Source of the DNA: Macrostomum lignano
Lineage: Eukaryota
Assembly (NCBI GenBank): GCA_002269645.1
Contig: NIVC01000594.1
Span: 434,001 to 498,000 of the forward strand
Direction: 5' to 3'
DNA length: 64,000 nucleotides
Of the stretch, positions 7,888 through 34,176 are shown one piece after another (position 1 is the stretch's first letter; each line of letters opens with the position of its first letter). The notes beneath the pieces are model-generated. The model was not told the DNA's origin. It did not search any database and saw only the letters and a list, made by a program, of their open reading frames with translations. The position numbers and the translations under genes were made by a program.

Positions 7888-9643
7888 GAGGTGTCGATAT
7901 TGGGTGTCCATTGGTGTCGATATTGAGTGTCCATTGGTGTCGATATTGGGTGTCCATTGGTGTCGATATTGGGTGTCCATTGGTGTCGCGATATTGGGTG
8001 TCCATTGGTGTCGATATTGGGTGTCCATTGGTGTCGATATTGGGTGTCCATTGGTGTCGATATTGGGTGTCCATTGGTGTCGATATTGGGTGTCCATTGG
8101 TGTCGCGATATTGGGTGTCCATTGGTGTCGATATTGGGTGTCCATTGGTGTCGATATTGGGTGTCCATTGGTGTCGATATTGGGTGTCCATTGGTGTCGC
8201 GATATTGGGTTCCATTGGTGTCGATATTGGGTGTCCATTGGTGTCGATATTGGGTGTCCATTGGTGTCGATATTGGGTGTCCATTGGTGTCGATATTGGG
8301 TGTCCATTGGTGTCGATATTGGGTGTCCATTGGTGTCGCGATATTGGGTGTCCATTGGTGTCGATATTGGGTGTCCATTGGTGTCGATATTGGGTGTCCA
8401 TTGGTGTCGCGATATTGGGTTCCATTGGTGTCGATATTGGGTGTCCATTGGTGTCGATATTGAGTGTCCATTGGTGTCGATATTGGGTGTCCATTGGTGT
8501 CGATATTGGGTGTCCATTGGTGTCGATATTGGGTGTCCATTGGTGTCGATATTGGGTGTCCATTGGTGTCGATATTGGGTGTCCATTGGTGTCGATATTG
8601 GGTGTCCATTGGTGTCGATATTGGGTGTCCATTGGTGTCGATATTGGGTGTCCATTGGTGTCGATATTTAGTGTCCATTGGTGTCGATATTGGGTGTCCA
8701 TTGGTGTCGCGATATTGGGTGTCCATTGGTGTCGATATTGGGTGTCCATTGGTGTCGATATTGGGTGTCCATTGGTGTCGCGATATTGGGTTCCATTGGT
8801 GTCGATATTGGGTGTCCATTGGTGTCGATATTGGGTGTCCATTGGTGTCGCGATATTGGGTTCCATTGGTGTCGATATTGGATGTCCATTGGTGTCGATA
8901 TTGGGTGTCCATTGGTGTCGCGATATTGGGTTCCATTGGTGTCGATATTGGGTTCCATTGGTGTCGATATTGGATGTCCATTGGTGTCGCGATATTGGGT
9001 TCCATTGGTGTCGATATTGGGTGTCCATTGGTGTCGATATTGAGTGTCCATTGGTGTCGATATTGGGTGTCCATTGGTGTCGATATTGGGTGTCCATTGG
9101 TGTCGATATTGGGTGTCCATTGGTGTCGATATTGGGTGTCCATTGGTGTCGATATTGGGTGTCCATTGGTGTCGATATTGGGTGTCCATTGGTGTCGATA
9201 TTTAGTGTCCATTGGTGTCGATATTGGGTGTCCATTGGTGTCGCGATATTGGGTGTCCATTGGTGTCGATATTGGGTGTCCATTGGTGTCGATATTGGGT
9301 GTCCATTGGTGTCGATATTGGGTGTCCATTGGTGTCGCGATATTGGGTTCCATTGGTGTCGATATTGGGTGTCCATTGGTGTCGATATTGGGTGTCCATT
9401 GGTGTCGCGATATTGGGTGTCCATTGGTGTCGATATTGGATGTCCATTGGTGTCGATATTGGGTGTCCATTGGTGTCGCGATATTGGGTTCCATTGGTGT
9501 CGATATTGGGTGTCCATTGGTGTCGATATTGGGTGTCCATTGGTGTCGATATTGGGTGTCCATTGGTGTCGATATTGGGTGTCCATTGGTGTCGATATTA
9601 TGTGTCCATTGGTGTCGATATTGGGTGTCCATTGGTGTCGATA
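7888..9643. repeat. Minisatellite, 23-bp unit GGTGTCCATTGGTGTCGATATTG (about 76 units)
   Basis: Direct reading; source of all ORFs 7780..9749. Confidence 0.97.
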
Positions 9644-10180
9644 TAAGACGCCAACTCACTACTTCAGTTGTCAGGGCAACTTTGTAAGAGCTCCTAGGTT
9701 TCTATGGGAAAATTGTATCAAAAAACCCGTGTTGACCAGAAGTTTTTGAAAATCATTGCCCAAACTTCTGATCCAGCAGTCCATGGCGCTGCAGGACCCA
9801 CCGACCCCCTGCTACCATTTCAGCAATTATCATGCTTAATTCCATAAAATGATAATGCTTTTCGCTACCTGGGAAGAGGACAGCTCTTAGCAGCAAGCTC
9901 CGCAGGAAGGCTAGCTATGGTCATAAATAAGCTCATGCGCTGCCACGCAGTGGAAGGGGCGGTCAAAAACTTTTATGAGCAGCATTGGTGCAATCAATGT
10001 CAGCACAGCACGTCAGCGCTGTCATAAAACTGCTGCATGGCTGGGTTTATAGCTCAAACACCGCGGAGCATGAGGCTGCAGGAACCAAGTGTAGGACAGT
10101 ACTTTTGCTTGCAGGGACTTTTTTAGCTTATGTGTCTCTCCATGAGTACGTACGGTACTCTCAATTTTCACAACGTCTAA

Positions 10181-11420
10181 CTTTAGGGTTTGTGAAGTTA
10201 AGAGTTTGTGAAGTTTAAGGTTTGTGAAGTCTAATAAGGTTTGTGAAGTTTAGGGTTTGTGAAGTTTAGGGTTTGTGAAGTTAAGGGTTTGTGAAGTTTA
10301 GGGTTTGTGAAGTCTAATAAGGTTTGTGAAGTTTAGGGTTTGTGAAGTTTAGGGTTTGTGAAGTTTAGGGTTTGTGAAGTTTAATGTTTGTGAAGTTTAG
10401 GGTTTGTGAAGATTAGGATTTGCGAAGTTTAGGGTTTGTGAAGTTTAGGGTTTGTGAAGTTTAGGGTTTGTGAAGATTAGGATTTGTGAAGTTTAGGGTT
10501 TGTGAAGTTAAGGGTTTGTGAAGTTTAGGGTTTGTGGAGTTTAAGGTTTGTGAAGTCTAAAAAGGTTTGTGAAGTTTAGGGTTTGTGAAGATTAGGATTT
10601 GCGAAGTTTAGGGTTTGTGAAGTTTAGGGTTTCTGAAGTTTAGGGTTTGTGAAGATTAGGATTTGTGAAGTTTAAGGTTTGTGAAGTTTAGGGTTTGTGA
10701 TGTTTAGGGTTTGTGAAGTTTAGGGTTTGTGAAGTTTAGGGTTTGTGAAGTTTAGGGTTTGTAAAGTTAAGGGTTTGTGAAGTTTAGGGTTTGTGAAGTT
10801 TAGGGTTTGTGAAGTTTAGGGTTTGTGAAGTTAAGGGTTTGTGAAGTTTAGGGTTTGTGGAGTTTAAGGTTTGTGAAGTCTAATAAGGTTTGTGAAGTTT
10901 AGGGTTTGTGAAGTTTAGGGTTTGTGAAGTTTAGGGTTTGTGAAGTTTAATGTTTGTGAAGTTTAGGGTTTGTGAAGATTAGGATTTGCGAAGTTTAGGG
11001 TTTGTGAAGTTTAGGGTTTGTGAAGTTTAATGTTTATGAAGATTAGGATTTGTGAAGTTTAGGGTTTGTGAAGTTTAGGGTTTGTGAAGCTTAATGTTTG
11101 TGAAGTTTAGGGTTTGTGAAGTTTAGGGTTTGTGAAGTTTAATGTTTGTGAAGTTTAAGGTTTGTGAAGTTTAGGGTTTGTGAAGTTTAGGGTTTGTGAA
11201 GCTTAATGTTTGTGAAGTTTAGGGTTTGTGAAGTTTAGAGTTTGTGAAGTTTAGGGTTTGTGAAGATTAGGATTTGTGAAGTTTAGGGTTTGTGAAGTTA
11301 AGGGTTTGTGAAGTTTAGGGTTTGTGAAGTTTAGGGTTTGTGAAGTTTAGGGTTTTTGAAGTTTAGGGTTTGTGAAGCGTAGGGTTTGTGAAGATTAGGA
11401 TTTGCGAAGTTAGGGTTTGT
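10181..11420. repeat. Minisatellite, 16-bp unit GTTTAGGGTTTGTGAA (contains TTAGGG)
   Basis: About 77 units read directly. Confidence 0.95.
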
Positions 11421-12306
11421 AGAATTTTTTAAGCTCATTAAATGCGATTCTTAAGCATATTTTGGATTGAATTTTCGGGTTTTATAATCTTAAAATCGAC
11501 CACCACGAAACTTCAAAATCTCTGAATTTCGCTCTCTAAATGTCGGATGCAAAAACGAGCGTTGAAATTCTCGAAAAAAACTTGCAATTGCGTACACAAG
11601 AAAACGAATGCGGGCGAAAGAACTTCCCCATCCCCAAGGCCCTTCATCACTAAGTTTTCTTCTCCCTTTCTCCCCTCTCTCTTGGGCCCTCCTCTTATCG
11701 CCAAGAACTGATCCTATGCAGCTGCTTGCGGCATTAAATTTTCTGTGTGTACCAACCTCTCCGCGCCCGCTGCTCTGTCTGCAGGCTCTCTCTCCTGGCA
11801 GACGTTGCCATCAAAGCTCCTCAGCCTCTGCGCGCCTCATCCTTATAACCCTCTACCCGTCTGTCTGTTCCCATCCCCCATCGCCAACTCTCTGGGCGAG
11901 GATTGGCTTAGCCAGGACGGGACGCGAGTGATTTAAGAGTTGGAACAAAAAGTACAGAACTGCCTGGCAACCAACCGTTTCACTCACTCAGTCGTTCGTT
12001 CGCTCGCTCACCCTCCAAGGCCTGGAGGACGCTTAAGCCAGTGAGCTCAGTTTGGCAGATTAGCCAAGCAAAAGAAGTACTCATATTTCCTACTTTCCCA
12101 CTGCAGGGGCAGCTCCCATATAGTTCCTGTAAGTCCGCGAACTGCAGAGTGGACTCCATGTTCTGCCCCATTGTTTTAGCATTACTGCCCGACAGTTTGA
12201 CAAAGCCGGAGTAAAATTTCGCTCGCTTTCTGCTAATCTACCTGTCCCTTAGTAACTAGCTCTTACATTTTTGCAGTGGCCTCAAAGTTCTGTAGTTCAC
12301 GACATT

Positions 12307-15300
12307 ATGGATGCTAACACTGCAGCTGTGAGGTGAGCATTAGTATATTTCTAAATCTATTTTACTGACCTATGTTTGTAAATATACTTGATAAATCTGG
12401 TGGGTGCCATTTTTTCTGGGTGGGTGCCACTTTATCTGGGTGGGTGCCATTTTATCTGGGTGGACGCCATTTTATCTGGGTGGGTGCCATTATATCTGGG
12501 TGGGTGCCATTATATCTGGGTGGATGCCATTATATCTGTGTGGGTGCCATTTTATCTGGGTGGGTGCCATTTTATCTGGGTGGGTGCCATTATATCTGGG
12601 TGGGTGCCGTTTTATCTGGGTGGTTGCCATTATATCTGTGTGGACGCCATTTTATCTGGGTGGACGCCATTTTATCTGTGTGGGTGCCATTATATCTGTG
12701 TGGACGCCATTTTATCTGTGTGGGTGCCATTTTATCTGGGTGGGTGCCATTTTATCTGTGTGGGTGCCATTTTATCTGGGTGGGTGCAATTTTATCTGGG
12801 TGGTCGCCAGAACCTGGGGCGCCAGCAAGAAAGAGTTTGAACACTTAGGGCAGCTGAGTCACCAATAGCATTGCAATATTCTAACTTTTGTGCAATATCA
12901 CGAGTGTATGTACGTACATTGGGGTCTTTTTATAGCTGGCTCTGAATTATATGTGTAATCCACGGCCACGCTCACACGTGTAATATTAGAAATGGAATGT
13001 ATGAGGGTTTAAAATGAGCTAGAACTAATCTCAGTTATAGTCCCTATCAGTCCTTCCTTAGGCTAGAGATTGCCTCCTCAAGCAATCTGGTAAATTGCGC
13101 ATTCAAGTAGAACTTGATTACATTTCCCCCAGCCTTCTGCCTTCAATAGTGCTGTCATGGGGACGGCATACAGTAGCGACTGTTTCCGAATTTCCGATAT
13201 ATCTGCCGAGCATATAGTGAACTAGTGCAGCGCTATAGTTGGTTATCTTAGTCCCCTCAGGACAAATTTGCTCAGACCCCGCCGGCCTCGTGACCAAGAC
13301 TTGCGCCGCATGAATATAAAGCCTATGACGACGAGCTAGGGGAATACGGTTGAATGGACACAGGACAGTTGCCTGCACACTGCACTGCAGCAGCAGCAGC
13401 AGTATCTATCTATCTGTCTGCTGCGTATCGTATTGAAGCATGAAATTGGGATTTGGGAGCTTTTCTCCCCAGACCAGACGAGACGGCAGTCCAATATAGC
13501 TGATCCACCGACCGACCGACCGAAGTGCTCAGAAAAGCAGGCAACAGAAAGTCCAGTCAAGTTCGCTCCAATTCAAGCGAATCAGACTCCAGAACCAGAC
13601 AGACTCATACCCCATCCACGCCCAGTTCATTCCCCCAATGACACTGATTGCTAGTTTTGTTGTTTGGCGTTGGCATTGGCGATGTTTGCTTTGCCTTTGC
13701 CCCCCTCTCTCGGGCTTAGTTAGCTTGGCCTTGCATAATAAGTTGAGCCAAAGGCAGCCTGTGGGCTTCACATCCCAACAGTTAAGTTCTGGCAATCTGT
13801 TGCAATCTGGAAAAAGTCAATGAATGTACATTAAGCAGCGAGAGAGACCCTAACTAAGCTCTAAAGCCGATACACTTCCACTAACGAAATTAGTGTATTG
13901 ACTCTGGGTATGTACATATAGTTTGAGGTGGGGGCATGGGAAGTTCAGGCCTGGGGGTTAATAAAAACGACCGCTCTCAATTTAACAGCCAATTAAAAAA
14001 CAGCGCTCGGTGGGGGGCCCTTAACTTACTTAGCTTAGCTAGCATTTATTGCCTTTTATTGGATTGATAAAACGGTTAACTGTGTCGGTTATCCTCAACT
14101 TTGATAATAAAACAGTTAACCGTTATCTTTAACATGAAGCGATAGATGGGGTGGGCTAGCAAGACTTATTATTATTACGGAGTGACGAAGCGAAAACGTG
14201 TACTTTATTCAATGTACATTTATCAGGCCAATGCTGTTAATATACGCATAACAGGATCCAGCAGGCTTGGCGAGGCTGGCAGAATCGATCAGCAACTGAC
14301 GGCTCCTCCCTAGAAGAGGACGAAGCTGCTCAAACAACTTCTGGCTACATGAGCGCCAGTAGCAGCGCCGAACACGTGACCGTCTCAACAGCGGCGGCGC
14401 ATAAGTCGCCAAGGCCACCGCCGCCACCGAGGCGAAGCTGGACGTCGGCCGCGCTGCCGTTGAATTTGCATTGCTTCGGCGACAGCTCCGGCGACGCTTC
14501 GTCGGCGTCTTCGTCTTCCTTAGCCGCGCCGTCGCCGCCGCCGCCGCCGTTGTCGGTCGGAGCCTCGCGCACGGATCTGACCGGCAGCGTACAGGTGCCA
14601 GCCTATTGCGACTCCTGGCTGCCAGGCCTGTCGTCGGATTATCGGGTGAGTCAAACTTTCGAGAGATGTTCGAAAAGTGCACAAGGTACTTATTCATTAC
14701 TGGAATCACATTGTCGCATCCTTGCTTCTCCCCTCTATGCTAACACAGTCGGGTCCAGAAGCAGCCATGGAGCTGTGCTATCGAAACGATGCGGCCTCGG
14801 ATTTCGGTGATTTAAGCGATATCGACTGCGAAGCTGGAGGAAACGGCGGCGGCGGCGGAGGAGGATGGCAGCGATTCTGCAGGCCGTCGCTGCTTAAAAA
14901 CTCGGAGGTGATAATGATAATTAATAACTAATTACGCCTGCACTAATGGGCAGATATGCAACCGACAGCTTAGCCTGAAGGACTAGAGGGTCGCACTCCC
15001 AACTACCCCAGCTAATACTGGTGGGTGAAGTTGTGAACTGCAGCAATGCAGAGTTAAGTGTCCTGCTCAAGGGCACAAATTGTTTCAAGTGGGTTGAGAA
15101 TCGAACCCCCTATGTTTTAGGTCGTGAGTCCGACGCTCTAACCAGTAGGCTACAACCCCTATAGGTGATGAAGTTGTATATCGCTCGTAGGCTGTTTTAG
15201 TAAGATGCTAATCACTTCTATAATCACATGCTTATCGATTCATCAACAATACAACATGTACGAGCGTATATTGAATTCACCGATCTTTGATACTCTACTA

Positions 15301-18139
15301 TCTACTATGCTTTCTCGAATTTCAGGGCAGCCGATCTCAGCAGATCAGTGGAAAATCGGCCTCTAGATCATTGGTAAACCTATATTAGTCTACAACTCTG
15401 ACTGTGATTTTTGTGATACCCCGCGACTTAAAAATTCTCATAATCCTATATCTATAGACTCGCAGACCATTGGAGCCTGAACTGCTGGAAAGTCTTGGTC
15501 TCGACTGTAATCACGAGATTTTGTCTGTTCACACTCGACTTAGAGGCGAAGCCCAATTAGCACTGGCTCAGGTATATTCAGAATGTCTGCAAAATTTTTC
15601 ACAAACGGTGGATAGAATCTTTATAGTATCTAAGGATAAAAAAGGTTATAGACCAAAATCTACCATTAAATTTACGCGAGGAGATTAAAAGAAAAATGAA
15701 GAATTTAATCTACACTAGAAAGCGTAGAGAGAAAATCTAGGTTTCAATGTACACTAGAAGGGGTAGAGAAAAATCTAATGTACACAGAGGGGCAGAAAGA
15801 ATAATCGATAAAGAGCAGTGTACATAGAAGCGATAGCGAGAAGAATCTACCACTGTACACAGTGAGGTGGAGAAATTCACTTTTCTATATAAACAAACAA
15901 CTGTGTCCAAACTCCGCAAATCAGGCCAAGCCCATGGCCCGTATGCAGCTGCAGTTGGACAGCAGCCCCAGCGACGAGACCAAACTCCACGTTGCCGGCC
16001 CGAACCACCCTGTAGTCGTTTCAAACCGCGCCGGGTTCAACTGGCCCGGCCGTCTGTCCGAAAATGATCTGCTCTGCGCTAGTCGAGGCGCCTTGAAAAT
16101 GCTGCACCGATGCCTGCTGACTAAAATTGATGGTGAGAGTTCGATGCCCGACGCACATATCACATATCGAATATAAGTACGGGCTTATACTAGCCACTTG
16201 TAGATAACTTCGATAGATAGCAACTCACGCCATGGATCTTCAGCACAATCTGTGCGGTGTTGAATAGCCTAGATAATTATGTACTCAACAACATTAAAAA
16301 GTCGCCACCTTTGAGAGTGCGCAGTAAATTCTAGCTCAGTATTGACTTTTGAGTGACGCAACTTGCGTCACGCGACGCAGAGTTGGGTAAAGTCATGTGA
16401 CTTGATTGATTATCGATGGTAATTTTAAAGTCACGTGACTTGATTGATTATCGATGGTAATTTTAAAGTCACGTGACTTGATTGATTATCGATGGTAATT
16501 TTAAAGTCACGTGACTTGATTGATTATCGATGGCAATTTTAAAGTCACGTGACTTAATTGATTATCGATGGTAATTTTAAAGTCACGTGACTTGATTGAT
16601 TATCGATGGTAATTTTAAAGTCACGTGACTTGATTGATTATCGATGGTAATTTTAAAGTCACGTGACTTGATTGATTATCGATGGTAATTTTAAAGTCAC
16701 GTGACTTAATTGATTATCGATGGTAATTTTAAAGTCACGTGACTTGATTGATTATCGATGGTAATTTTAAAGTCACGTGACTTGATTGATTATCGATGGT
16801 AATTTTAAAGTCACGTGACTTGATTGATTATCGATGGTAATTTTAAAGTCACGTGACTTAATTGATTATCGATGGTAATTTTAAAGTCACGTGACTTAAT
16901 TGATTATCGATGGTAATTTTAAAGTCACGTGACTTGATTGATTATCGATGGTAATTTTAAAGTCACGTGACTTAATTGATTATCGATGGTAATTTTAAAG
17001 TCACGTGACTTGATTGATTATCGATGGTAATTTTAAAGTCACGTGACTTGATTGATTATCGATGGCAATTTTAAAGTCACGTGACTTAATTGATTATCGA
17101 TGGTAATTTTAAAGTCACGTGACTTGATTGATTATCGATGGTAATTTTAAAGTCACGTGACTTGATTGATTATCGATGGCAATTTTAAAGTCACGTGACT
17201 TAATTGATTATCGATGGTAATTTTAAAGTCACGTGACTCGCGAGCAGCTCAGTGATAAACGAGCCCGGCCTAGTTCGACGACAGCACAACAAGGCAAACA
17301 TCAAACAAAAACTAATTTTGTCGTTTAAAAAGCAAAGTGACTCTGGCTTTTTTACTGGCTGGGCAAAGAGCATTGCTTGCTTCATTTTTACATTCTGCCC
17401 CGAGATGCCTCGAGGATGAATCATTGATTAGTGGAATTGGTTATATCGTACAGCACTGGATCTGTACCAGAGAGAAATCTATATCGTAATGCCCACTTGG
17501 GTTGTTTCTACGGCAGGTATGATACAACTCCAGTTTTAGGCCCGAACTGTCTCACATGCATACTCCTGCAAACAGGATTGAATTAGTTAATCAGATTGAA
17601 GTGGGAAGTCTGGTTTAACACCCGTGCATGGATACACATTGCAGTAACTGTAACCTGGAATGAAGACAATTTTAACATTGACTTGATGGATCGGAGTGCA
17701 TGTCCCTGAACGAGAACATTATTTATACAGCAGAATTGATGTTGAAAATTAATTTTGAATGATCAGAGGTCGGACCTTTTCATTATACAATATACATGTA
17801 TACTTAGTGTACATTCAGCTTATTCCAAGCATCGAGTATGCTTCGTGCCCACGCGACACAAATCAATACGACCTCACAAATCCGCAGCATGCAACAGCGA
17901 GCTGGTCAACTGCCTTGTTGAGCGAGACGATCTGCACATGGAGCAGGACTCCCTGCTCATTGAAGTCGAAGATCTCACTCGGTAAGTCAATGTTTTCTTA
18001 TCGAGATTTTTTACAACGTAGTACTTGTATTTTCGATACATATCGGTCGAACAATTTCAGGCGAGCTAAAGAGGCAGCCAGACGCCTTAATGCGAAGGAG
18101 CTGGGAGGCTGGAGCGATTCATCAATTAATTGCAATTAA
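12307..18139 (+). CDS. SCHIP1: Schwannomin-interacting protein 1 homolog with N-terminal IQ motif (IQCJ-SCHIP1-like), about 372 aa, 8 coding exons
   Basis: Exons 12307-12332, 14255-14645, 14749-14907, 15326-15373, 15458-15571, 15925-16132, 17888-17981, 18061-18139; all GT-AG and phase-compatible (1119 nt). RLRGEAQLALAQ|AKPMARMQLQLD matches SCHIP1 [55 protein letters not shown] matches [39 protein letters not shown] matches LQICFVND. Exons 1+2 give MDANTAAVR|IQQAWRGWQNR. The start could lie further 5' (open frame back to an acceptor at 12276). Confidence 0.85.
12398..12803. repeat. Intronic minisatellite, 20-bp unit GGTGGGTGCCATTTTATCTG
   Basis: Starts about 65 bp after the SCHIP1 exon-1 donor; source of ORFs 12372..12868. 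Confidence 0.95.
14940..15159 (-). mobile_element. tRNA-derived SINE (CORE-SINE-like) in SCHIP1 intron 3
   Basis: The minus strand reads GGGGTTGTAGCCTACTGGTTAGAGCG (A box) ... GGTTCGATTC (B box, 15098-15107), then GTGCCCTTGAGCAGGACACTTAAC (15052-15076), which resembles the MIR/CORE segment GTGACCTTGGGCAAGTCACTTAAC. The 3' end is approximate. Confidence 0.6.
16390..17237. repeat. Intronic minisatellite, 38-bp unit AAAGTCACGTGACTTGATTGATTATCGATGGTAATTTT
   Basis: 22 perfect GTCACGTGAC copies at 16430+38n (last at 17228) plus one variant; in SCHIP1 intron 6. Confidence 0.97.
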
Positions 18140-21176: not shown

Positions 21177-26864
<5,688 letters not shown>

Positions 26865-27334
26865 AATACTAAATGTTTGCTTTGAAAAGACAGCAAAACA
26901 AATTGCTTTGTTAGTTAGTTTAGACAGTTTAGAAGTGATTAGTAAGATACTCAAGTCGTAACAGTCGCTGTTGTAATAGTTAAGTCGTGAAAAATTAACG
27001 AAAATACGCGAGCAGTCTTCTCATCCTGAAATCCTAGACGTAAATTATTATAATCTGACACTAAATTGTAATGTCGCGATAAAAGTTGTACTTTAAACAA
27101 ACTTTTAAACTTTGAAAACCCATTTAACAAGAAAGAGATTTTTCATTACTTACTAAGTTTTTTATTTGTTTTGAGACTAATTTAGTTTATAAAAAAACGC
27201 TAGGAGTTTTAAAGATACTGGTTGCTATCATAAGGCTGGAATTATTTGAGTAAAAAATATACCTTCATTTTTTACAACGCAACTGAAGTTGTTTAGACTA
27301 GACAGCAGATTTGGTGCGACTTACTAGGTCAGAA
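26865..27334. promoter_or_regulatory. Putative bidirectional promoter region between SHP2 (-) and NME8-like (+)
   Basis: The two start codons diverge 470 bp apart in AT-rich, repeat-free sequence. TSSs are unknown. Confidence 0.55.
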
Positions 27335-29896
27335 ATGGCAAGGAAAAAGCAAGAAATAGCCCTTCAAAAGGAGCTTAACACGCAAGAAGAATGGGACGAC
27401 GCAATGACGAAGGAAGGTCTTTTGATTGTTGACATTTACCAAGACTGGTGTGGTCCTTGTAAGTCGATCGTTAGCCACTTTAGAAGAATAAAGAACGAGT
27501 CCGGTGAAGATCTTCTTAATTTTGCTGTTGCGAAAGCCGACACAATCGATAGCTTGGATAGGTACAGAGGCAAATGCAAGCCATGCTTTCTATTCTACGG
27601 ATCAGGAACGTTAGTAGAAGTCATTCGCGGAGTCAATCCCCCAGTGCTGGAGAAGAAGATCAAGGCTCATTTGACCAACGAACTCAACGTACTGAAGGGC
27701 GAACCAGGTGCCGAGCGAGTAGAAATCAGAGATCCAGAGTTTAAGCACCTTGATGAAGCTGAGCGACTGGCTAAGCAGAAAGCGGACGAGGAAGAGGAGG
27801 AAGAAGAACTCGAGAGAGAAGTCACGGTTGTGCTCATTAAGCCTGATGCGCAACACAGGATTGACGAAATCATGCAGAGACTGGAGGAACGAGGAATCGA
27901 AATCCTAGAACAGCAAAAGCGAAAACTCACTGACGAAGAGGCCAGGGACTTTTATCGACACTTGGAGGACCAGGAATGGTTCGAGCAGATGATCACCTAC
28001 ATGACGACTGACGAATCCACGGTGTTGGTCATCAGCAAAGGCAACTCTGGTATCATCTCGGAATTCCGTGAAATTCTCGGTCCAGCCAATGTTGAAGAGG
28101 CGAAGGAGACTCAGCCGGAAAGCTTGCGAGCCATGTTCGGCTCAGAGTCATATAAGAATGCCATTCACGCTGCCGACTCTGGTGAAAAGGCAGCGAAGGA
28201 GCTGGAGTTCTTCTTCCCCGAGTTCAAGGTTCCGACTTTTAAAGTTCAGAAAGCCAAGAAGGAGAAGCGCAAAGAGATCGAAAAAACAGTTGCGCTCATT
28301 CGGCCTGACGCCTTCATGGAGTTCAAGGACGAAATCTTGGCCAAGATCAAGGAGGCCGGCTTCGCCATCGCGCTGAGAAAGGAGGTCCAACTGACCAGGG
28401 AGCAAGCGGAAGAGTTCTACTCGGAGAAGAAGGACAGTCCGTTCTTCCCGGAGCTCATCACCAGGATGACCAATGGCCCTGTGCTGGCGCTGGCGCTCGC
28501 TAAGGAGGACGCCATCAAGGAGTGGCGCAACGCTCTCGGCGAGAAGGACCCCAAGGAGGCCAAGCAGACGCATCCGCAGAGCCTCCGAGCGATGTACTCA
28601 AAAGAGGAAATTCAGATCAACCTGCTGCACGGCTCGGACTCGTTTAACTCGGCCAAGAAGGAGCTGGACTTCTTCTTCCCGGTCGAGCAGACCCTGGTGG
28701 TGATCAAGCCGGACGCATACGAGAACCGTCGCGAAATCATTCAGAAGGCCAAAGAGGCCGAATTCCGCATTGCAGCACGCAAGGAGCTGGTGCTCAGTGA
28801 CGAGATGGCGCGCGAGTTCTACAAGAGCCACGCCGAGAAGGAGTACTTCGAAGAGCTGGTGGCTCATATGACCAGCGGCAAGTCGATCTTCCTCGTGCTC
28901 TCCCGCAACGATGCCATTCAGGGCTGGCGAGAGTTGATGGGCCTGCCGGATCCGACCCAGGCCCTGGACAACGACCACTCCATCCGGTCAATCTTCGGCA
29001 AGGACATCAAAGCCAACGCTGTACACGGTTCGAGCAGCAAAGAGCACGCGGCGGCTTCAATCCGTTTGATCTTCGGCGAAATACAGTTCGACCACGATGG
29101 TAAACGAGTTCCAGGAACGGGCGACCTGACAGAAGAAGACGAGCTGGAGACCACTGAGGATGAAGACGCCGAAGGGGAGATGCGCGGTCCGAATGGCGAG
29201 ATCGTTCGAACGGACGCTCAAGCTGCTCAAAAATCTGACGAGGAGGAAGGCGAAGGCGGCGACCACGAGCGAGAGCATGAACACGAAGATCAAGAGGGTG
29301 AGCACGGGGAAGGTGAACAACACGATGAAGGAGAGCACAAGGATGAGCATCACGAGGAACAGAAAGAAGAGCAGCATGAAGAGCAGAAGGAAGAGCAGGA
29401 AGAAGAGCAGAAGGAAGAGCAAAAGGAAGAGCAAAAGGAAGAGCAAAAGGAAGAGCAGGAAGAAGAGCAGCATGAAGAGCAAAAGGAAGAGCAGAAGGAA
29501 GAACAGGAAGAAGAGCAGAAGGAAGAGCAGAAGGAAGAGCAGAAGGAAGAGCAAAAGGAAGAGCAGAAGGAAGAGCAAAAGGAAGAGCAGAAGGAAGAGC
29601 AGAAGGAAGAGCAGAAGGAAGAGCAGAAGGAAGAGCAGCATGAAGAGCAGAAGGAAGAGCAAAAGGAAGAGCAGAAGGAAGAGCAGAAGGAAGAGCAGAA
29701 GGAAGAGCAGCATGAAGAGCAGAAGGAAGAGCAAAAGGAAGAGCAGAAGGAAGAGCAGAAGGAAGAGCAGAAGGAAGAGCAGAACCAAGCGCAGAAAGAA
29801 GAACAAAAGGACGAACAAAAGGACGAGCCGAAAGAAGAGCAAAAGGACGACGGGTCGAAGGATGGGCAGAAAGACGGAGAACAACCAACAGCATAA
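27335..29896 (+). CDS. NME8: Thioredoxin domain + three NDP-kinase-like domains (NME8/NME9/TXNDC3; outer-arm dynein IC1-type) with acidic EEQK tail, 853 aa, intronless
   Basis: True ATG at 27335 (MARKKQEIALQ, cf. NME9 MGSRKKEIALQ); WCGPC; three T(V/L)xxIKPD/RPD...H(G/A)(S/A)DS-type repeats (NAIHAADS, NLLHGSDS, NAVHGSSS); single uninterrupted ORF. NME8 versus NME9 orthology is uncertain, but three NDK domains fit NME8/IC1. Confidence 0.9.
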   Translation: MARKKQEIALQKELNTQEEWDDAMTKEGLLIVDIYQDWCGPCKSIVSHFRRIKNESGEDLLNFAVAKADTIDSLDRYRGKCKPCFLFYGSGTLVEVIRGVNPPVLEKKIKAHLTNELNVLKGEPGAERVEIRDPEFKHLDEAERLAKQKADEEEEEEELEREVTVVLIKPDAQHRIDEIMQRLEERGIEILEQQKRKLTDEEARDFYRHLEDQEWFEQMITYMTTDESTVLVISKGNSGIISEFREILGPANVEEAKETQPESLRAMFGSESYKNAIHAADSGEKAAKELEFFFPEFKVPTFKVQKAKKEKRKEIEKTVALIRPDAFMEFKDEILAKIKEAGFAIALRKEVQLTREQAEEFYSEKKDSPFFPELITRMTNGPVLALALAKEDAIKEWRNALGEKDPKEAKQTHPQSLRAMYSKEEIQINLLHGSDSFNSAKKELDFFFPVEQTLVVIKPDAYENRREIIQKAKEAEFRIAARKELVLSDEMAREFYKSHAEKEYFEELVAHMTSGKSIFLVLSRNDAIQGWRELMGLPDPTQALDNDHSIRSIFGKDIKANAVHGSSSKEHAAASIRLIFGEIQFDHDGKRVPGTGDLTEEDELETTEDEDAEGEMRGPNGEIVRTDAQAAQKSDEEEGEGGDHEREHEHEDQEGEHGEGEQHDEGEHKDEHHEEQKEEQHEEQKEEQEEEQKEEQKEEQKEEQKEEQEEEQHEEQKEEQKEEQEEEQKEEQKEEQKEEQKEEQKEEQKEEQKEEQKEEQKEEQKEEQHEEQKEEQKEEQKEEQKEEQKEEQHEEQKEEQKEEQKEEQKEEQKEEQNQAQKEEQKDEQKDEPKEEQKDDGSKDGQKDGEQPTA
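29345..29845 (+). repeat. Coding 12-bp minisatellite (CAGAAGGAAGAG)n encoding about 40 EEQK tetrads
   Basis: Inside the NME8-like ORF. Confidence 0.95.
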
Positions 29897-30943: not shown

Positions 30944-33900
30944 TCAACGAGTCGCAGGCTTCTCCGCGTCCGTCTCCCGATCCGTTAGGTCAGTTTTGCT
31001 TGTTCTATCGAAAGGTTTCGGAAACAGAATTTTGACGGCCAATTCCGATGAGCTGCTAATCCTAACCGGATGGAAAGTGCAGCACAGGTTGCGGTGGATT
31101 ATCATGATAGCGCCAGTTACAGGCCTGTCGTCAACTTTAGAAGACGAATGGAATGAAATGAGCGCATTGTTGGGGCCCTCAACGGTGGGGCAGCGTTGGC
31201 CAATCCAGTCAATGTCGCCCGTTTTTACCACTGCAACGAGGCCGTTCCACTGCAGGAACAGTCGAAGGTTTCGGTACTCTGCAATTTTGGGTTTGGGGTT
31301 TGGTTTTTGTCTTTCCACTCGATTTTCTCTCACCCCTCTCAACTATCACGTCGTTGTGTGCCTGCCTCAATACTTCTCTTTCCTCCCTCTATCTTAACCC
31401 TCTTTCCTCCCTCTATCCTCCCTCTATCCTCCCTCTATCTTAACCCTCTTTCCTCCCTCTATCCTCCCTCTATCCTCCCTCTATCCTCCCTCTATCTTAA
31501 CCCTCTTTCCTCCCTCTATCCTCCCTCTATCCTCCCTCTATCCTCCCTCTATCCTCCCTCTTTCCTCCCTCTATCCTCCCTCTATCCTCCCTCTATCCTC
31601 CCTCTATCCTCCCTCTATCCTCCCTCTATCCTCCCTCTATCCTCCCTCTATCCTCCCTCTATCCTCCCTCTATCCTCCCTCTATCCTCCCTCTATCCTCC
31701 CTCTATCCTCCCTCTATCCTCCCTCTATCCTCCCTCTATCCTCCTTCTATTCTCCCTCTTTCCTCCCTCTTTCCTCCCTCTTTCCTCCCTCTTTCCTCCC
31801 TCTTTCCTCCCTCTTTCCTCCCTCTTTCCTCCCTCTTTCCTCCCTCTTTCCTCCCTCTTTCCTCCCTCTTTCCTCCCTCTTTCCTCCCTCTTTCCTCCCT
31901 CTTTCCTCCCTCTTTCCTCCCTCTTTCCTCCCTCTTTCCTCCCTCTTTCCTCCCTCTTTCCTCCCTCTTTCCTCCCTCTTTCCTCCCTCTTTCCTCCCTC
32001 TTTCCTCCCTCTTTCCTCCCTCTTTCCTCCCTCTTTCCTCCCTCTTTCCTCCCTCTTTCCTCCCTCTTTCCTCCCTCTTTCCTCCCTCTTTCCTCCCTCT
32101 TTCCTCCCTCTTTCCTCCCTCTTTCCTCCCTCTTTCCTCCCTCTTTCCTCCCTCTTTCCTCCCTCTTTCCTCCCTCTTTCCTCCCTCTTTCCTCCCTCTT
32201 TCCTCCCTCTTTCCTCCCTCTTTCCTCCCTCTTTCCTCCCTCTTTCCTCCCTCTTTCCTCCCTCTTTCCTCCCTCTTTCCTCCCTCTTTCCTCCCTCTTT
32301 CCTCCCTCTTTCCTCCCTCTTTCCTCCCTCTATCCCCCCTCTATCCCCCTCTATCCCCCCTCTATCCCCCTCTATCCCCCTCTATCCTTCTTCTATCCTT
32401 CCTCTATCCTCCCAGCTCACCCTCAATCTCCAGCTCCCTATCCCAGTCCTGGAAGCGCAGCAGAGTCTCAGTGCTCAGCCTGTTCGGCAAGTAGGAGAGC
32501 CGGTTACTGGACTGGGAGCAAGTGGTCCTTGGCCTGTCCACAACCTCGTAGTCGATGAGAAATCCGCGAGACAAAGAGAGCGACGAGCAGGATAGAAAGT
32601 ACACATCGCCAACCAGGGCGGCCAGTGGCAGGTATTTAAATAGCAGCACGAGGTCGCGATACAGGTATCCGCTGAACTGCTCACAGCCTGCGGTGAATTC
32701 ATTGGAGGAAATGAAGCTTGTGATGGGGCGCCCTCTTTGTCAGCGCCTTCTCTGATGGCGCCTTCTATGTTGGCGCCTTTTATGTTTGGCGCCTTTTTAT
32801 GTTTGGCGCCTTTTATGTTTGGCGCCTTTTATGTTGGAAGCCAGTTTTATGTTTGGCGCCTTTTATGTTTGGCGCCTTTTATGTTGGCGCCATTTATGTT
32901 TGGCGCCTTTTATGTTTGGCGCCTTTTTATGTTTGGCCCCTTTTTATGTTTGGCGCCTTTTATGTTTGGCGCCTTTTATGTTTGGCGCCTTTTATGTTTG
33001 GCGCCTTTTATGTTTGGCGTCTTTTATGTTTGGCGCCTTTTATTTCGGTGCCTTTTATGTTGGCGCTGGTGATGTCGCTGCTAACTCTTTCGCTGTTGGT
33101 GTTATGGTGCATTCTTGAGAGAACACCCAAAATTGAATAAATAAATTTTTTGTTTAATACACATAAATTTACTTTTGTGGCTTGCGAAAATTGTATCGAA
33201 CAAATGGCATGTTTGATTTTAAATTTAAATGTCATGCAGAAGTTAGTTTCCCGTTATTTTGATTTTAAAGTAATTACATGGATATGAATGAAAGGAATAA
33301 ACATGATTAAAACAAAATCAGGTCCGGTTAAAAAATAGGTTTACTCCCTCTATGAGTCTATTCCCTCTATCCTCCCTCCATCCTTCCTTTATCCTTCCTT
33401 TGTACTCCCTCTATCCTCTGTCTCTCCTCTCTACTCTATCCTCTCTCTATCCTCCCTCTATCCTCCCTCTATCCTCCCTCTATCCTCTCTCTATCCTCTC
33501 TCTATCCTCTCTCTATCCTCCCTCTATCCTCTCTCTATCCTCTCTCTATCCTCCCTCTATCCTCCCTCTATCCTCTCTCTATCCTCTCTCTATCCTCCCT
33601 CTATCCTCCCTCTATCCTCCCTCTATCCTCCCTCTATCCTCTCTCTATCCTCCCTCTATCCTCTCTCTATCCTCTCTCTATCCTTCTGAAGCTTCCTGAA
33701 AACAAGTCCCAGCTAAAAGCCGAGCACAGAGGAAGCAACTCACAGACGTCCATGAGCCCCATCTCAGCGGCGCAGTGCTCGCACTCGCTCAGGCCTCGCA
33801 GTACAATGATATTATTGGGGTAGACAATTTTAAACAGCAACAACATCTGCAGTACATTGAGCTGCACCTGGCCCTGCACGTTAACATACAAATAGTTGCC

Positions 33901-34176
33901 AAGGAACACGTAGGTGGTGCTGCTGGGCCAGCCGTACTGCCGGAAAATGGCCAACAGGTCTCCCAGGTTGCCGTGCAGCTTGCCAACAACTCTACAGCCG
34001 ACGCTGGACTTCAACTCCAGCAGCGAGGGCTCCAGACGAAAGATAGCGACGGCGCGTTTGACAATCTGGCTGAAATCCACGCTGGTCAGCGTCTCGCCGT
34101 TTATGAGGCGCTCAGCTGACAGACCGGCCCATTCCTGACAGCTGCTCAAGGCGGTGCGAACCTTCATCGCTGACAT
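30944..34176 (-). CDS. PP1/PPP-family serine/threonine phosphatase-like protein with degenerate catalytic motifs (pseudophosphatase), about 344 aa, 3 exons
   Basis: Exons 34176-33744, 32687-32421, 31278-30944 (phases 1,1; 1035 nt). Collinear with PP1: EPSLLEL, GKLHG (GDIHG), YVFLGNY (YLFLGDY), FKIVYPNNIIVLRGLSE (YKIKYPENFFLLRGNHE), LPLAALVG (LPIAAIVD), TGAIMIIHRNLCCTF (AGAMMSVDETLMCSF). Confidence 0.85.
31375..32410. repeat. Intronic 11-bp pyrimidine minisatellite (CCTCCCTCTAT)n then (CCTCCCTCTTT)n
   Basis: Direct reading; intron 2 of the PP1-like gene. Confidence 0.95.
32745..33065. repeat. Intronic 16-bp minisatellite TTTGGCGCCTTTTATG
   Basis: About 19 units; intron 1 of the PP1-like gene. 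Confidence 0.93.
33355..33685. repeat. Intronic 11-bp minisatellite CCTC(C/T)CTCTAT
   Basis: Same family as 31375-32410. Confidence 0.9.

What the first reader, a model, noticed from the sequence alone, without database searches (positions are those of the whole stretch)
12307..14290. Invertebrate-style SCHIP1 gene carries a canonical IQ motif assembled across a 1.9-kb intron (IQCJ-SCHIP1 architecture)
Seen: a 26-nt exon ATG GAT GCT AAC ACT GCA GCT GTG AG|gtgagc (12307-12332) joins in phase to aacag|G ATC CAG CAG GCT TGG CGA GGC TGG CAG AAT CGA (14255). This gives AAVRIQQAWRGWQNR, an exact IQxxxRGxxxR motif, in frame with the SCHIP1 domain. The ORF track misses it. Known: in vertebrates IQCJ-SCHIP1 is a read-through fusion of two loci giving a calmodulin-binding protein at axon initial segments and nodes, and Drosophila Schip1 acts in Hippo signalling. 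Inference: the IQ+SCHIP1 protein may be the ancestral bilaterian form rather than a vertebrate read-through novelty, or it was gained convergently. I cannot verify whether this has been reported.
Basis: partly seen in the sequence, partly recalled or inferred. Interest (0 to 1): 0.75.

Follow-up and report, generated by a model that had tools for sequence, protein, structure and literature searches.

The report
Flatworm SCHIP1 gene with ancestral IQ motif
The flatworm Macrostomum lignano's SCHIP1 gene starts with a calmodulin-type IQ motif that matches the one in human IQCJ-SCHIP1, down to the intron position, so the human "read-through fusion" looks like an old single gene; public annotations already show this architecture, so the finding is real but ordinary.

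Summary
A 26-nt first coding exon (12307-12332) joins in phase to 14255 and gives MDANTAAVR|IQQAWRGWQNR, at the head of an 8-exon, 372-aa SCHIP-1 protein. The 11-residue IQ core lies entirely in exon 2. Exon 1 supplies only the start codon and flank.

The window is Macrostomum lignano. An RNA-derived GenBank model of a 97%-identical copy (BOX15_Mlig006465g1) begins with the same peptide.

The motif is orthologous to the vertebrate IQCJ IQ, not convergent. SCHIP-1 proteins of molluscs, an annelid, a nemertean, a brachiopod, chelicerates, echinoderms, a hemichordate and amphioxus carry I(T/I)IQRAWRxY upstream of the SCHIP-1 domain, often with a second IQ. In flatworm, leech, limpet, nemertean, acorn worm and a bird, an intron splits the codon just before the I/L of IQ, always in phase 2.

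Novelty is low. RefSeq already names invertebrate proteins "IQCJ-SCHIP1 readthrough transcript protein-like", and Pfam PF15157 hits them. I found no paper stating the ancestral-gene conclusion.

The flatworm gene is a trimmed member that keeps only the second IQ. Calmodulin binding is inferred, not shown.

The parts
12271..12276 (+). Putative SL trans-splice (or cis) acceptor TTGCAG, 30 nt upstream of the ATG. Sequence from 12277 is in frame with the CDS and has no stop.
   Evidence: Read from the sequence. It matches the M. lignano SL-acceptor motif [T/C]TNCAG reported in PMC8629364. Use of this site is inferred, not shown.
12307..12332 (+). Coding exon 1 (26 nt): ATG..GTG AG, encoding MDANTAAV plus two bases of Arg9. 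Donor is gtgagc. Start context is A at -3 and G at +4.
   Evidence: The same exon, with one synonymous GCT>GCC change, starts the RNA-derived GenBank model in L001.
12333..14254 (+). Intron 1 (1,922 nt, GT..AG, phase 2). It contains a 20-nt tandem array at 12395-12803.
   Evidence: The position and phase are shared with Helobdella, Patella, Tubulanus, Saccoglossus and a bird IQCJ gene.
14255..14645 (+). Coding exon 2 (391 nt). It holds the IQ motif followed by a Ser/Pro/Ala-rich region predicted to be disordered.
   Evidence: AlphaFold2 on the deposited copy P0001 predicts residues 25-220 as disordered.
14256..14288 (+). IQ motif core IQQAWRGWQNR (residues 10-20), fitting IQxxxRGxxxR. It is orthologous to the second IQ of the ancestral module and to the vertebrate IQCJ IQ.
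   Evidence: Regex and shuffles; alignment A3 with I, Q, A and W (near-)invariant; Helobdella RIQQAWRRY; predicted helix at residues 3-23.
14749..14907 (+). Coding exon 3 (159 nt). It carries the conserved MELCYRNDAASD..SD acidic/Ser box, where the family consensus is LQICFMNE..SD.
   Evidence: The Cys is an invariant column in family alignments A1/A2.
15326..15373 (+). Coding exon 4, a 48-nt micro-exon (GSRSQQISGKSASRSL), phase 0 on both sides. It may be alternative.
   Evidence: Present in deposited protein P0001. Splice sites ttcag|GGC and TTG|gtaaac.
15458..15571 (+). Coding exon 5 (114 nt); start of the SCHIP-1_C helical region (..RLRGEAQLALAQ).
   Evidence: Aligned to human IQCJ-SCHIP1.
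15925..16132 (+). Coding exon 6 (208 nt); AKPMARMQLQL... part of SCHIP-1_C.
17888..17981 (+). Coding exon 7 (94 nt); the most conserved coiled-coil core, NSELVNCLVERDDLHMEQDSLLIEVEDLT.
   Evidence: Pfam SCHIP-1_C, 44 bits on this segment alone..
18061..18139 (+). Coding exon 8 (79 nt including the TAA stop).
   Evidence: The C-terminus is identical to P0001.

Best explanation
This is the Macrostomum lignano member of the IQCJ-SCHIP1 gene family. It has 8 coding exons (12307-18139, + strand) and encodes 372 aa. The protein consists of a short N-terminal amphipathic helix carrying one IQ motif (IQQAWRGWQNR), about 200 residues of disordered Ser/Pro/acidic linker, and the C-terminal SCHIP-1 coiled-coil domain.

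Shown: the start codon sits in a 26-nt exon, so the IQ can only be translated through the 12332|14255 splice. Shown by comparison: the IQ is the retained second IQ ('IQ-B') of a ~96-residue N-terminal module (IQ-A ... QVEEGELLVENHKLEV ... IITIQRAWRxY). That module precedes the SCHIP-1 domain in spiralians, chelicerates, ambulacrarians and amphioxus, and vertebrate IQCJ is its second half.

The vertebrate 'IQCJ-SCHIP1 read-through' therefore reflects an ancestral bilaterian single gene. The flatworm has trimmed the module down to IQ-B.

Inferred, not shown: the IQ helix tethers (apo-)calmodulin or a related EF-hand light chain to a SCHIP-1 scaffold that oligomerises through its coiled coil. This would put the scaffold's cortical-cytoskeleton or Hippo-type partnerships under Ca2+/calmodulin control.
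For: Gene model:
- All junctions are GT..AG, phase-consistent, and fit the M. lignano splice motifs GT[G/A]AG and CAG (PMC8629364).
- Pfam SCHIP-1_C scores 77.7-82.3 bits against a 23.5 cut-off.
- BLASTP to human IQCJ-SCHIP1 gives E=2e-20 over the C-terminal 144 aa.

Junction:
- GenBank protein BOX15_Mlig006465g1 (P0001) starts MDANTAAVRIQQAWRGWQNR.
- Its locus L001 is collinear with the window at 91-97% identity, with the same donor and acceptor and one synonymous change in exon 1.
- That annotation is purely RNA-derived: StringTie/TACO, a de novo transcriptome and TransDecoder (PMC5730564).

Orthology of the IQ:
- An exhaustive profile search found 1,215 family representatives.
- IQ-B-like motifs occur N-terminal to SCHIP-1_C in Haliotis, Patella, Tubulanus, Lingula, Helobdella, Branchiostoma, Saccoglossus, Asterias, Lytechinus, Apostichopus, Anneissia, Tachypleus, Centruroides, human and goose.
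- The 96-aa module aligns without gaps across these taxa.
- PF15157 scores above its cut-off in six invertebrate phyla.

Intron: a phase-2 split of the codon just before the [I/L]Q is seen in the window, Helobdella, Patella, Tubulanus, Saccoglossus and the bird Todus IQCJ gene.

Structure: AlphaFold2 predicts a helix at 3-23, disorder at 25-220, and confident helices at 235-267 and 309-371.
Against: - No RNA reads were examined for this particular copy. Transcript support is by proxy, through the near-identical deposited copy.
- Pfam IQ is below its gathering score (14-16 bits against 20.3).
- PF15157 does not hit the flatworm protein at all, so IQ-B homology rests on about 10 residues plus intron position.
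- The hydrophobic residue expected three positions after the last Arg of a full IQ motif is Thr here.
- Calmodulin binding is untested in any invertebrate SCHIP1. The vertebrate data are known to me from Martin et al. 2008 and Kwasnicka-Crawford et al. 2006, which I could not open.
- Two M. lignano paralogues (P0002, P0003) and all pancrustacean representatives lack the IQ, so it is dispensable for some SCHIP-1 functions.
Confidence: 0.82

Rival explanations
1. The IQ-like string is not translated. Exon 1 is an annotation artefact, transcripts start within or after intron 1, and the protein begins at Met41 (ATG 14349). On this view the motif is a chance match in a 5' UTR.
For: The mechanical ORF starts at 14349. 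Pfam IQ is sub-threshold. No reads from this exact locus were inspected.
Against: The RNA-derived deposited model of the 97%-identical copy uses the junction. The chance of the strict motif in this region is about 1e-3. The intron position and phase are identical in five other lineages, with near-identical codons in Helobdella (AG|G ATC CAA CAA GCC TGG). The ATG has a good start context and an in-frame stop lies 51 nt upstream.
Confidence: 0.04
2. The IQ is translated but arose independently in flatworms (convergence). It is unrelated to vertebrate IQCJ.
For: PF15157 does not detect the flatworm N-terminus. No trace of the rest of the ancestral module lies upstream in the window. IQ motifs are short and arise easily.
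Against: The motif occupies the same place as in other phyla: the first residues of the large variable exon that precedes SCHIP-1_C. It has the same phase-2 intron one codon upstream as in annelid, mollusc, nemertean, hemichordate and bird. The I-Q-x-A-W-R residues are shared with all of them. Helobdella shows an intermediate, partly degraded module.
Confidence: 0.04
3. The motif is orthologous and translated, but its partner is not calmodulin. It could bind a myosin-light-chain-like or other EF-hand protein, or simply act as a basic amphipathic membrane- or actin-binding helix.
For: Outside Macrostomum, IQ-B lacks the Gly of the canonical motif (IQRAWRxY), and Pfam calls it 'IQ-like'. The flatworm motif lacks the terminal hydrophobic position. 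No binding data exist for invertebrates.
Against: From my knowledge of Martin et al. 2008 and Kwasnicka-Crawford et al. 2006 (not opened here), vertebrate IQCJ-SCHIP-1 binds calmodulin through this motif. The flatworm version is closer to the canonical consensus than the human one (PF00612 15.2 against 13.6 bits).
Confidence: 0.1

Closest known systems
Human/vertebrate IQCJ-SCHIP1 (NP_001184042.1; 'IQCJ-SCHIP1 readthrough')
   Same: The IQ motif (IIQRAWREYLQR against RIQQAWRGWQNR) is N-terminal to a disordered Ser/acidic region and the SCHIP-1_C coiled coil. The intron before the IQ has identical position and phase (bird IQCJ). The C-terminal domain aligns at E=2e-20.
   Different: The flatworm protein lacks the ~50 residues upstream of the IQ (ENHQLAMD...) that define PF15157. 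It is 372 aa against 563 aa. The gene is compact at 5.8 kb. Its motif has the canonical Gly. No separate 'IQCJ' or 'SCHIP1' transcription units are evident.
Invertebrate IQCJ-SCHIP1-like proteins (e.g. Haliotis XP_071086652.1, Branchiostoma XP_066266423.1, Saccoglossus XP_006811401.2, Tubulanus XP_074657986.1)
   Same: One gene encodes IQ plus SCHIP-1_C. IQ-B opens the large variable exon. The phase-2 intron is in the same place.
   Different: Those proteins carry the full ~96-aa module with two IQ motifs, IQ-A (IQxxFRGxxxRK) and IQ-B. Macrostomum keeps only IQ-B, behind an 8-residue leader.
Helobdella robusta HELRODRAFT_188645 (XP_009019680.1)
   Same: This is the closest IQ sequence (VLRIQQAWRRYRES). 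The split codon is the same (AG|G = Arg). PF15157 is not detected here either, and IQ-A is lost.
   Different: It retains a degenerate stretch upstream of the IQ (VEDHNNNN...), a 257-nt intron, and a longer protein (566 aa).
Drosophila/pancrustacean Schip1 (Hippo pathway adaptor; PMC5882220)
   Same: The SCHIP-1_C domain.
   Different: Insect, crustacean and myriapod representatives in the top 150 hits show no IQ. Drosophila itself was not examined.

Membership tests
SCHIP-1 family (Pfam PF10148 SCHIP-1_C) | C-terminal SCHIP-1_C domain above Pfam's gathering score | tested here: met
   77.7 bits on the window model and 82.3 bits on P0001, against a 23.5 cut-off. E=2e-20 to human.
SCHIP-1 family (Pfam PF10148 SCHIP-1_C) | Predicted long C-terminal helices (coiled coil / leucine zipper) | tested here: met
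   AlphaFold2 predicts helices at 235-267 and 309-371, with pLDDT up to 98.
IQCJ-SCHIP1 architecture | IQ motif and SCHIP-1_C encoded in one polypeptide | tested here: met
   Phase-consistent 8-exon model. The same N-terminus is found in RNA-derived GenBank protein P0001.
IQCJ-SCHIP1 architecture | N-terminal IQCJ module (Pfam PF15157) above its gathering score | tested here: not met
   No PF15157 hit at E<=1 for the window model or P0001. No upstream module exons in the window. Only the ~12-residue IQ-B part is retained.
IQCJ-SCHIP1 architecture | Intron in phase 2 within the codon immediately preceding the [I/L]Q of the IQCJ IQ | tested here: met
   Window GTG AG|..|G ATC. The same split is seen in Helobdella, Patella, Tubulanus, Saccoglossus and Todus (bird) IQCJ.
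IQ calmodulin-binding motif (PF00612) | Consensus [FILV]QxxxRGxxxR | tested here: met
   IQQAWRGWQNR at residues 10-20.
IQ calmodulin-binding motif (PF00612) | Pfam gathering score (20.3 bits) | tested here: not met
   14.0-16.3 bits. The human IQCJ-SCHIP1 IQ scores 13.6 bits on the same model, so this threshold does not separate them.
IQ calmodulin-binding motif (PF00612) | Binds calmodulin | not testable with these tools
   Needs a pull-down or ITC experiment.
IQCJ-SCHIP1 architecture | CK2-phosphorylated acidic/Ser box that binds ankyrin-G (human residues 383-428, per PMC9356056) | tested here: inconclusive
   The neighbouring LQICF.N[DE]..SD box is conserved (MELCYRNDAASDFGDLSDID; invariant Cys). 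The downstream acidic Ser stretch is poorly alignable.

The most novel reading that the evidence does not exclude
'IQCJ' and 'SCHIP1' were never two genes. The bilaterian ancestor had one gene encoding a two-IQ N-terminal module fused to the SCHIP-1 coiled coil. Vertebrates lost IQ-A and evolved internal promoters and poly(A) sites that make it look like a read-through fusion. Mandibulate arthropods lost the module. Macrostomum pared it down to IQ-B alone, marking IQ-B as the minimal retained calmodulin handle. As far as I could find in the held literature, this has not been stated in print, although database annotations imply it.
Probability: 0.45. Interest if true: 0.4.

Novelty: new member of a known kind. 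Interest (0 to 1): 0.3.

Why it matters
For genome annotation, this shows how a 26-nt first exon can hide a functional motif from ORF-based reading. It also shows that a sub-threshold Pfam IQ can be validated by intron-position orthology.

For SCHIP1 biology, it reframes the human 'IQCJ-SCHIP1 read-through' as the ancestral gene form. The literature describes it as a fusion bridging two separate genes (e.g. PMC4373682). It also points to a conserved second IQ and a 96-residue module in invertebrates that vertebrates have partly lost.

M. lignano can be made transgenic (PMC5730564). It therefore offers a minimal one-IQ version in which to test what calmodulin tethering does to a SCHIP-1 scaffold, outside the vertebrate axon-initial-segment context.

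The architecture itself is already visible in RefSeq names and Pfam, so the advance is modest.

Tried and rejected
- The word-index profile search with the family alignment returned almost only ticks and M. lignano. I replaced it with the exhaustive representative search.
I used deposited P0001 instead.
- tblastn of 13 N-terminal modules against the whole window found no upstream IQ-A or ENHKLEV exons. The weak hits at 561-608 and elsewhere (E>0.1) look like chance.
- Exact-protein locus look-ups failed for Lingula, Asterias, Anneissia and Apostichopus. The Branchiostoma locus came back truncated to 2 kb. Intron mapping therefore rests on Helobdella, Patella, Tubulanus, Saccoglossus and Todus.
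- The human gene was not requested, because DNA is not returned for gene ranges over 100 kb.
- Martin et al. 2008 (PMC6670540) is not held. Four literature searches found no paper linking IQCJ to invertebrates.
- My regex count of IQ frequency among long representatives was unreliable because the anchor motif misses many taxa. I do not use it.
- I considered and rejected two readings: translation from Met41 only, and convergent origin (see rivals).
Full report
**1. What is in the sequence**

ATGGATGCTAACACTGCAGCTGTGAG at 12307-12332 is followed by gtgagc. The acceptor ...cgcataacag lies at 14245-14254 and is followed by GATCCAGCAGGCTTGGCGAGGCTGGCAGAATCGA. Joining 12332 to 14255 keeps the frame and gives MDANTAAVR-IQQAWRGWQNR.

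Two points refine the description:
- The 11-residue IQxxxRGxxxR core (14256-14288) lies entirely in the second exon. The first exon supplies the start codon, eight residues and two bases of Arg9.
- The splice is nevertheless obligatory. The genomic frame opens only after a TAA at 14238-14240, there is no ATG until 14349, and the only AG in between is 14253-14254.

The strict IQ pattern occurs 3 times in all six frames of the window, against 0.59 +/- 0.85 in composition-preserving shuffles. That is about 5e-6 per position.

**2. The gene**

Reading downstream, I traced a phase-consistent GT..AG chain:
- 12307-12332
- 14255-14645
- 14749-14907
- 15326-15373
- 15458-15571
- 15925-16132
- 17888-17981
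- 18061-18139 (TAA stop)

This gives 372 aa. The 48-nt fourth exon became apparent only from the deposited homologue; without it the product is 356 aa. The donors (GTGAG x3, GTAAG, GTGAT, GTAAA, GTATA) and acceptors (CAG x6, TAG x1) fit the M. lignano splice motifs GT[G/A]AG and CAG reported in PMC8629364.

Pfam gives SCHIP-1_C at 77.7 bits (cut-off 23.5) and IQ at 14-16 bits (cut-off 20.3). BLASTP to human IQCJ-SCHIP1 gives E=2e-20 over the C-terminal 144 residues.

AlphaFold2 on the deposited copy predicts a helix at residues 3-23 (the IQ), disorder at 25-220, and confident helices at 235-267 and 309-371.

**3. Source organism and transcript support**

The best database hit is GenBank 'hypothetical protein BOX15_Mlig006465g1 [Macrostomum lignano]' (P0001, 381 aa). 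It begins MDANTAAVRIQQAWRGWQNRSAT.

Its locus (NIVC01000522.1, L001) is collinear with the window at 91-97% identity. It has the same neighbours: a GCN2-like kinase upstream and an SHP2-like phosphatase downstream on the other strand. Exon 1 there differs by one synonymous change (GCT>GCC), and the donor and acceptor are the same.

The GenBank annotation of that assembly was built only from RNA evidence: StringTie/TACO on RNA-seq, a de novo transcriptome, TransDecoder ORFs, and SL-read-defined 5' ends (PMC5730564). The junction therefore has transcript support in a near-identical copy. M. lignano is a neopolyploid with a redundant assembly. Reads for this exact copy were not examined.

**4. 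Is the IQ related to vertebrate IQCJ?**

An exhaustive HMMER profile search of 1.84 billion representatives found 1,215 SCHIP-1 family members. I screened the best 150 and named them. An IQ of the form I(T/I)IQRAWRxY lies N-terminal to SCHIP-1_C in:
- Haliotis and Patella (Mollusca)
- Tubulanus (Nemertea)
- Lingula (Brachiopoda)
- Helobdella (Annelida; VLRIQQAWRRYRES, almost the flatworm sequence)
- Branchiostoma
- Saccoglossus
- Asterias, Lytechinus, Apostichopus and Anneissia (Echinodermata)
- Tachypleus and Centruroides (Chelicerata), in degenerate form (IQ[RQ]GWH)
- human (P0059 = NP_001184042.1) and goose

Most invertebrate proteins carry a second, canonical IQ (IQxxFRGxxxRK) 68-73 residues upstream. 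The ~96-residue stretch between the two IQs aligns without a single gap across phyla, and vertebrate IQCJ aligns to its second half.

Pfam's PF15157 ('Fusion protein IQCJ-SCHIP1 with IQ-like motif') scores above its cut-off in Haliotis, Lingula, Branchiostoma, Asterias, Tubulanus and Saccoglossus. It does not hit Macrostomum or Helobdella. On PF00612 the human IQ scores 13.6 bits, below the flatworm's 15.2. The sub-threshold score is therefore not evidence against the motif.

**5. Intron position**

I mapped deposited proteins back onto their loci.

| Species | Sequence around the junction | Split codon |
|---|---|---|
| Macrostomum (window) | GTG AG\|gtgagc..aacag\|G ATC CAG | Arg |
| Helobdella | CTA AG\|gttaag..ttcag\|G ATC CAA (intron 257 nt) | Arg |
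| Patella | ..ATC AT\|gtaagt..tgcag\|A CTG | Ile |
| Tubulanus | ..ATT AC\|gtgagt..tgtag\|G ATT | Thr |
| Saccoglossus | ..ATT AC\|gtaagt..tttag\|A ATT | Thr |
| Todus mexicanus (bird) IQCJ | ..AAG AT\|gtaagt..cgcag\|T ATT | Ile |

In all six, the intron splits the codon immediately before the I/L of IQ, in phase 2, and the exon that follows is the large variable one. The preceding intron, before HKLEV, is also shared by Patella, Tubulanus, Saccoglossus and the bird.

Together with the sequence match, this makes convergence very unlikely. It identifies the window's intron 1 as the orthologue of the vertebrate IQCJ intron.

**6. What the flatworm gene is**

No exons for the rest of the ancestral module exist upstream in the window, and the deposited model also starts at this ATG. 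The M. lignano gene is therefore a trimmed IQCJ-SCHIP1 in which only IQ-B survives behind an 8-residue leader. It has acquired the canonical Gly (RGW), where other taxa have RxY. Two M. lignano paralogues (P0002, P0003) lack any IQ. Insect, crustacean and myriapod representatives lack it too, which suggests loss in Mandibulata.

**7. Mechanism**

Shown:
- the gene structure;
- the need for the splice;
- orthology of the IQ;
- the predicted layout of helix, disordered linker and coiled coil.

Inferred:
- The IQ helix binds (apo-)calmodulin, as reported for vertebrate IQCJ-SCHIP-1. That is from my knowledge of Martin et al. 2008 and Kwasnicka-Crawford et al. 2006; the former was not retrievable.
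[quoted passage not shown] In vertebrates the scaffold binds ankyrin-G and spectrin after CK2 phosphorylation (PMC9356056, PMC12190637). In Drosophila it links Expanded to Tao-1 (PMC5882220).
- Whether flatworm SCHIP1 has any of these partners is unknown.

**8. Novelty**

The architecture is already public. The M. lignano protein is deposited. RefSeq names Haliotis, Branchiostoma and Ixodes proteins 'IQCJ-SCHIP1 readthrough transcript protein(-like)'. Pfam PF15157 detects the module in invertebrates.

I did not find, in four full-text searches, any paper saying that IQCJ-SCHIP1 is the ancestral single gene. Papers still describe it as a fusion bridging two separate genes (PMC4373682). The flatworm locus is a new, reduced member of a known kind. 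The evolutionary reading is well supported but only modestly surprising.

**9. Verdict**

- Observation: confirmed.
- Interpretation (ancestral rather than convergent): supported.
- Novelty claim: largely removed by existing annotation.
- Interest: 0.3.

Noticed in passing
window 12271-12306: TTGCAG|TGG... fits the M. lignano SL trans-splice acceptor motif [T/C]TNCAG. The 35-nt SL ends in ATG (PMC8629364), and 12277-12306 is open and in frame with the CDS (WPQSSVVHDI-MDAN...). If the SL is spliced here, its own AUG would be in frame and could add 11 residues before Met1.
   Followed up: partly
window 16388-17238 (intron between coding exons 6 and 7): A 38-nt tandem array of 22.4 copies at 97% identity. 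Each unit carries the 10-bp palindrome GTCACGTGAC (E-box core CACGTG) plus ATCGAT. Overlapping blastn alignments over the matching part of the deposited copy L001 suggest the array is there too.
   Followed up: no
window 7890-9644 and 10182-11420: Two large intergenic satellites lie upstream of the gene: 23-nt x 75.5 copies, and 16-nt x 76.8 copies (TTTAGGGTTTGTGAAG, which contains a TTAGGG-like core). They generate the long spurious ORFs in all frames.
   Followed up: no
window 12395-12803 (intron 1): A 20-nt tandem array of 20.5 copies (ATCTGGGTGGGTGCCATTTT). It produces 150-aa artefactual ORFs in three frames inside the intron.
   Followed up: no
window 15326-15373: A 48-nt, phase-0/phase-0 micro-exon (GSRSQQISGKSASRSL) is present in the deposited protein. 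Skipping it keeps the frame, so it is a candidate alternative exon.
   Followed up: partly
window 21177-24882, minus strand: An SHP2/corkscrew-type tyrosine phosphatase gene (two SH2 domains plus Y_phosphatase). A long in-frame (PSNLTNP)n repeat sits in the SH2-bearing ORF, so the ORF may read through an intronic microsatellite.
   Followed up: partly
window 27311-29896, plus strand: A single uninterrupted 861-aa ORF encodes thioredoxin plus three NDK domains (NME8/TXNDC3-like) and ends in a long (EEQK)n low-complexity tail. An intronless gene is unusual among its intron-rich neighbours.
   Followed up: partly
window 33667-34176, minus strand: By eye, this 169-aa ORF resembles the core of a PPP-family Ser/Thr phosphatase with the catalytic motifs altered (GKLHGN, LGNYLYVNVQG, LRGLSE). 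Pfam gives no hit at E<=1e-3. It could be a pseudo-phosphatase or a decayed exon.
   Followed up: partly
P0038, P0061, P0062, P0064, P0072, P0100, P0143 (other species): Invertebrate IQCJ-SCHIP1 proteins share a gap-free ~96-aa module with two IQ motifs (IQ-A IQxxFRGxxxRK, then QVEEGELLVENHKLEV, then IQ-B). Vertebrate IQCJ lacks IQ-A. The Pfam PF15157 match on these proteins starts after IQ-A and covers only the second half of the module.
   Followed up: partly
P0098 (Saccoglossus), P0134 (Lytechinus), P0029 (Limulus), P0032 (Centruroides): RefSeq names for several clear IQCJ-SCHIP1 orthologues are misleading: 'SUN domain-containing protein 2-like', 'dentin sialophosphoprotein-like', 'general transcriptional corepressor trfA-like' and 'myb-like protein P'. 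The names probably reflect the low-complexity linker.
   Followed up: no
window exon 2 (aa 77-90) and exon 3 (aa 146-165): Two copies of an LxxC[FY]xxD..S(D) acidic box (LNLHCFGDSSGD and MELCYRNDAASD). The M. lignano paralogues P0002 and P0003 also have two (MELCFRNDAAS, MQLCFISD). Human has MNLQICFVNDSGSD, plus a weaker SMNTFSDSS in the IQCJ exon.
   Followed up: no
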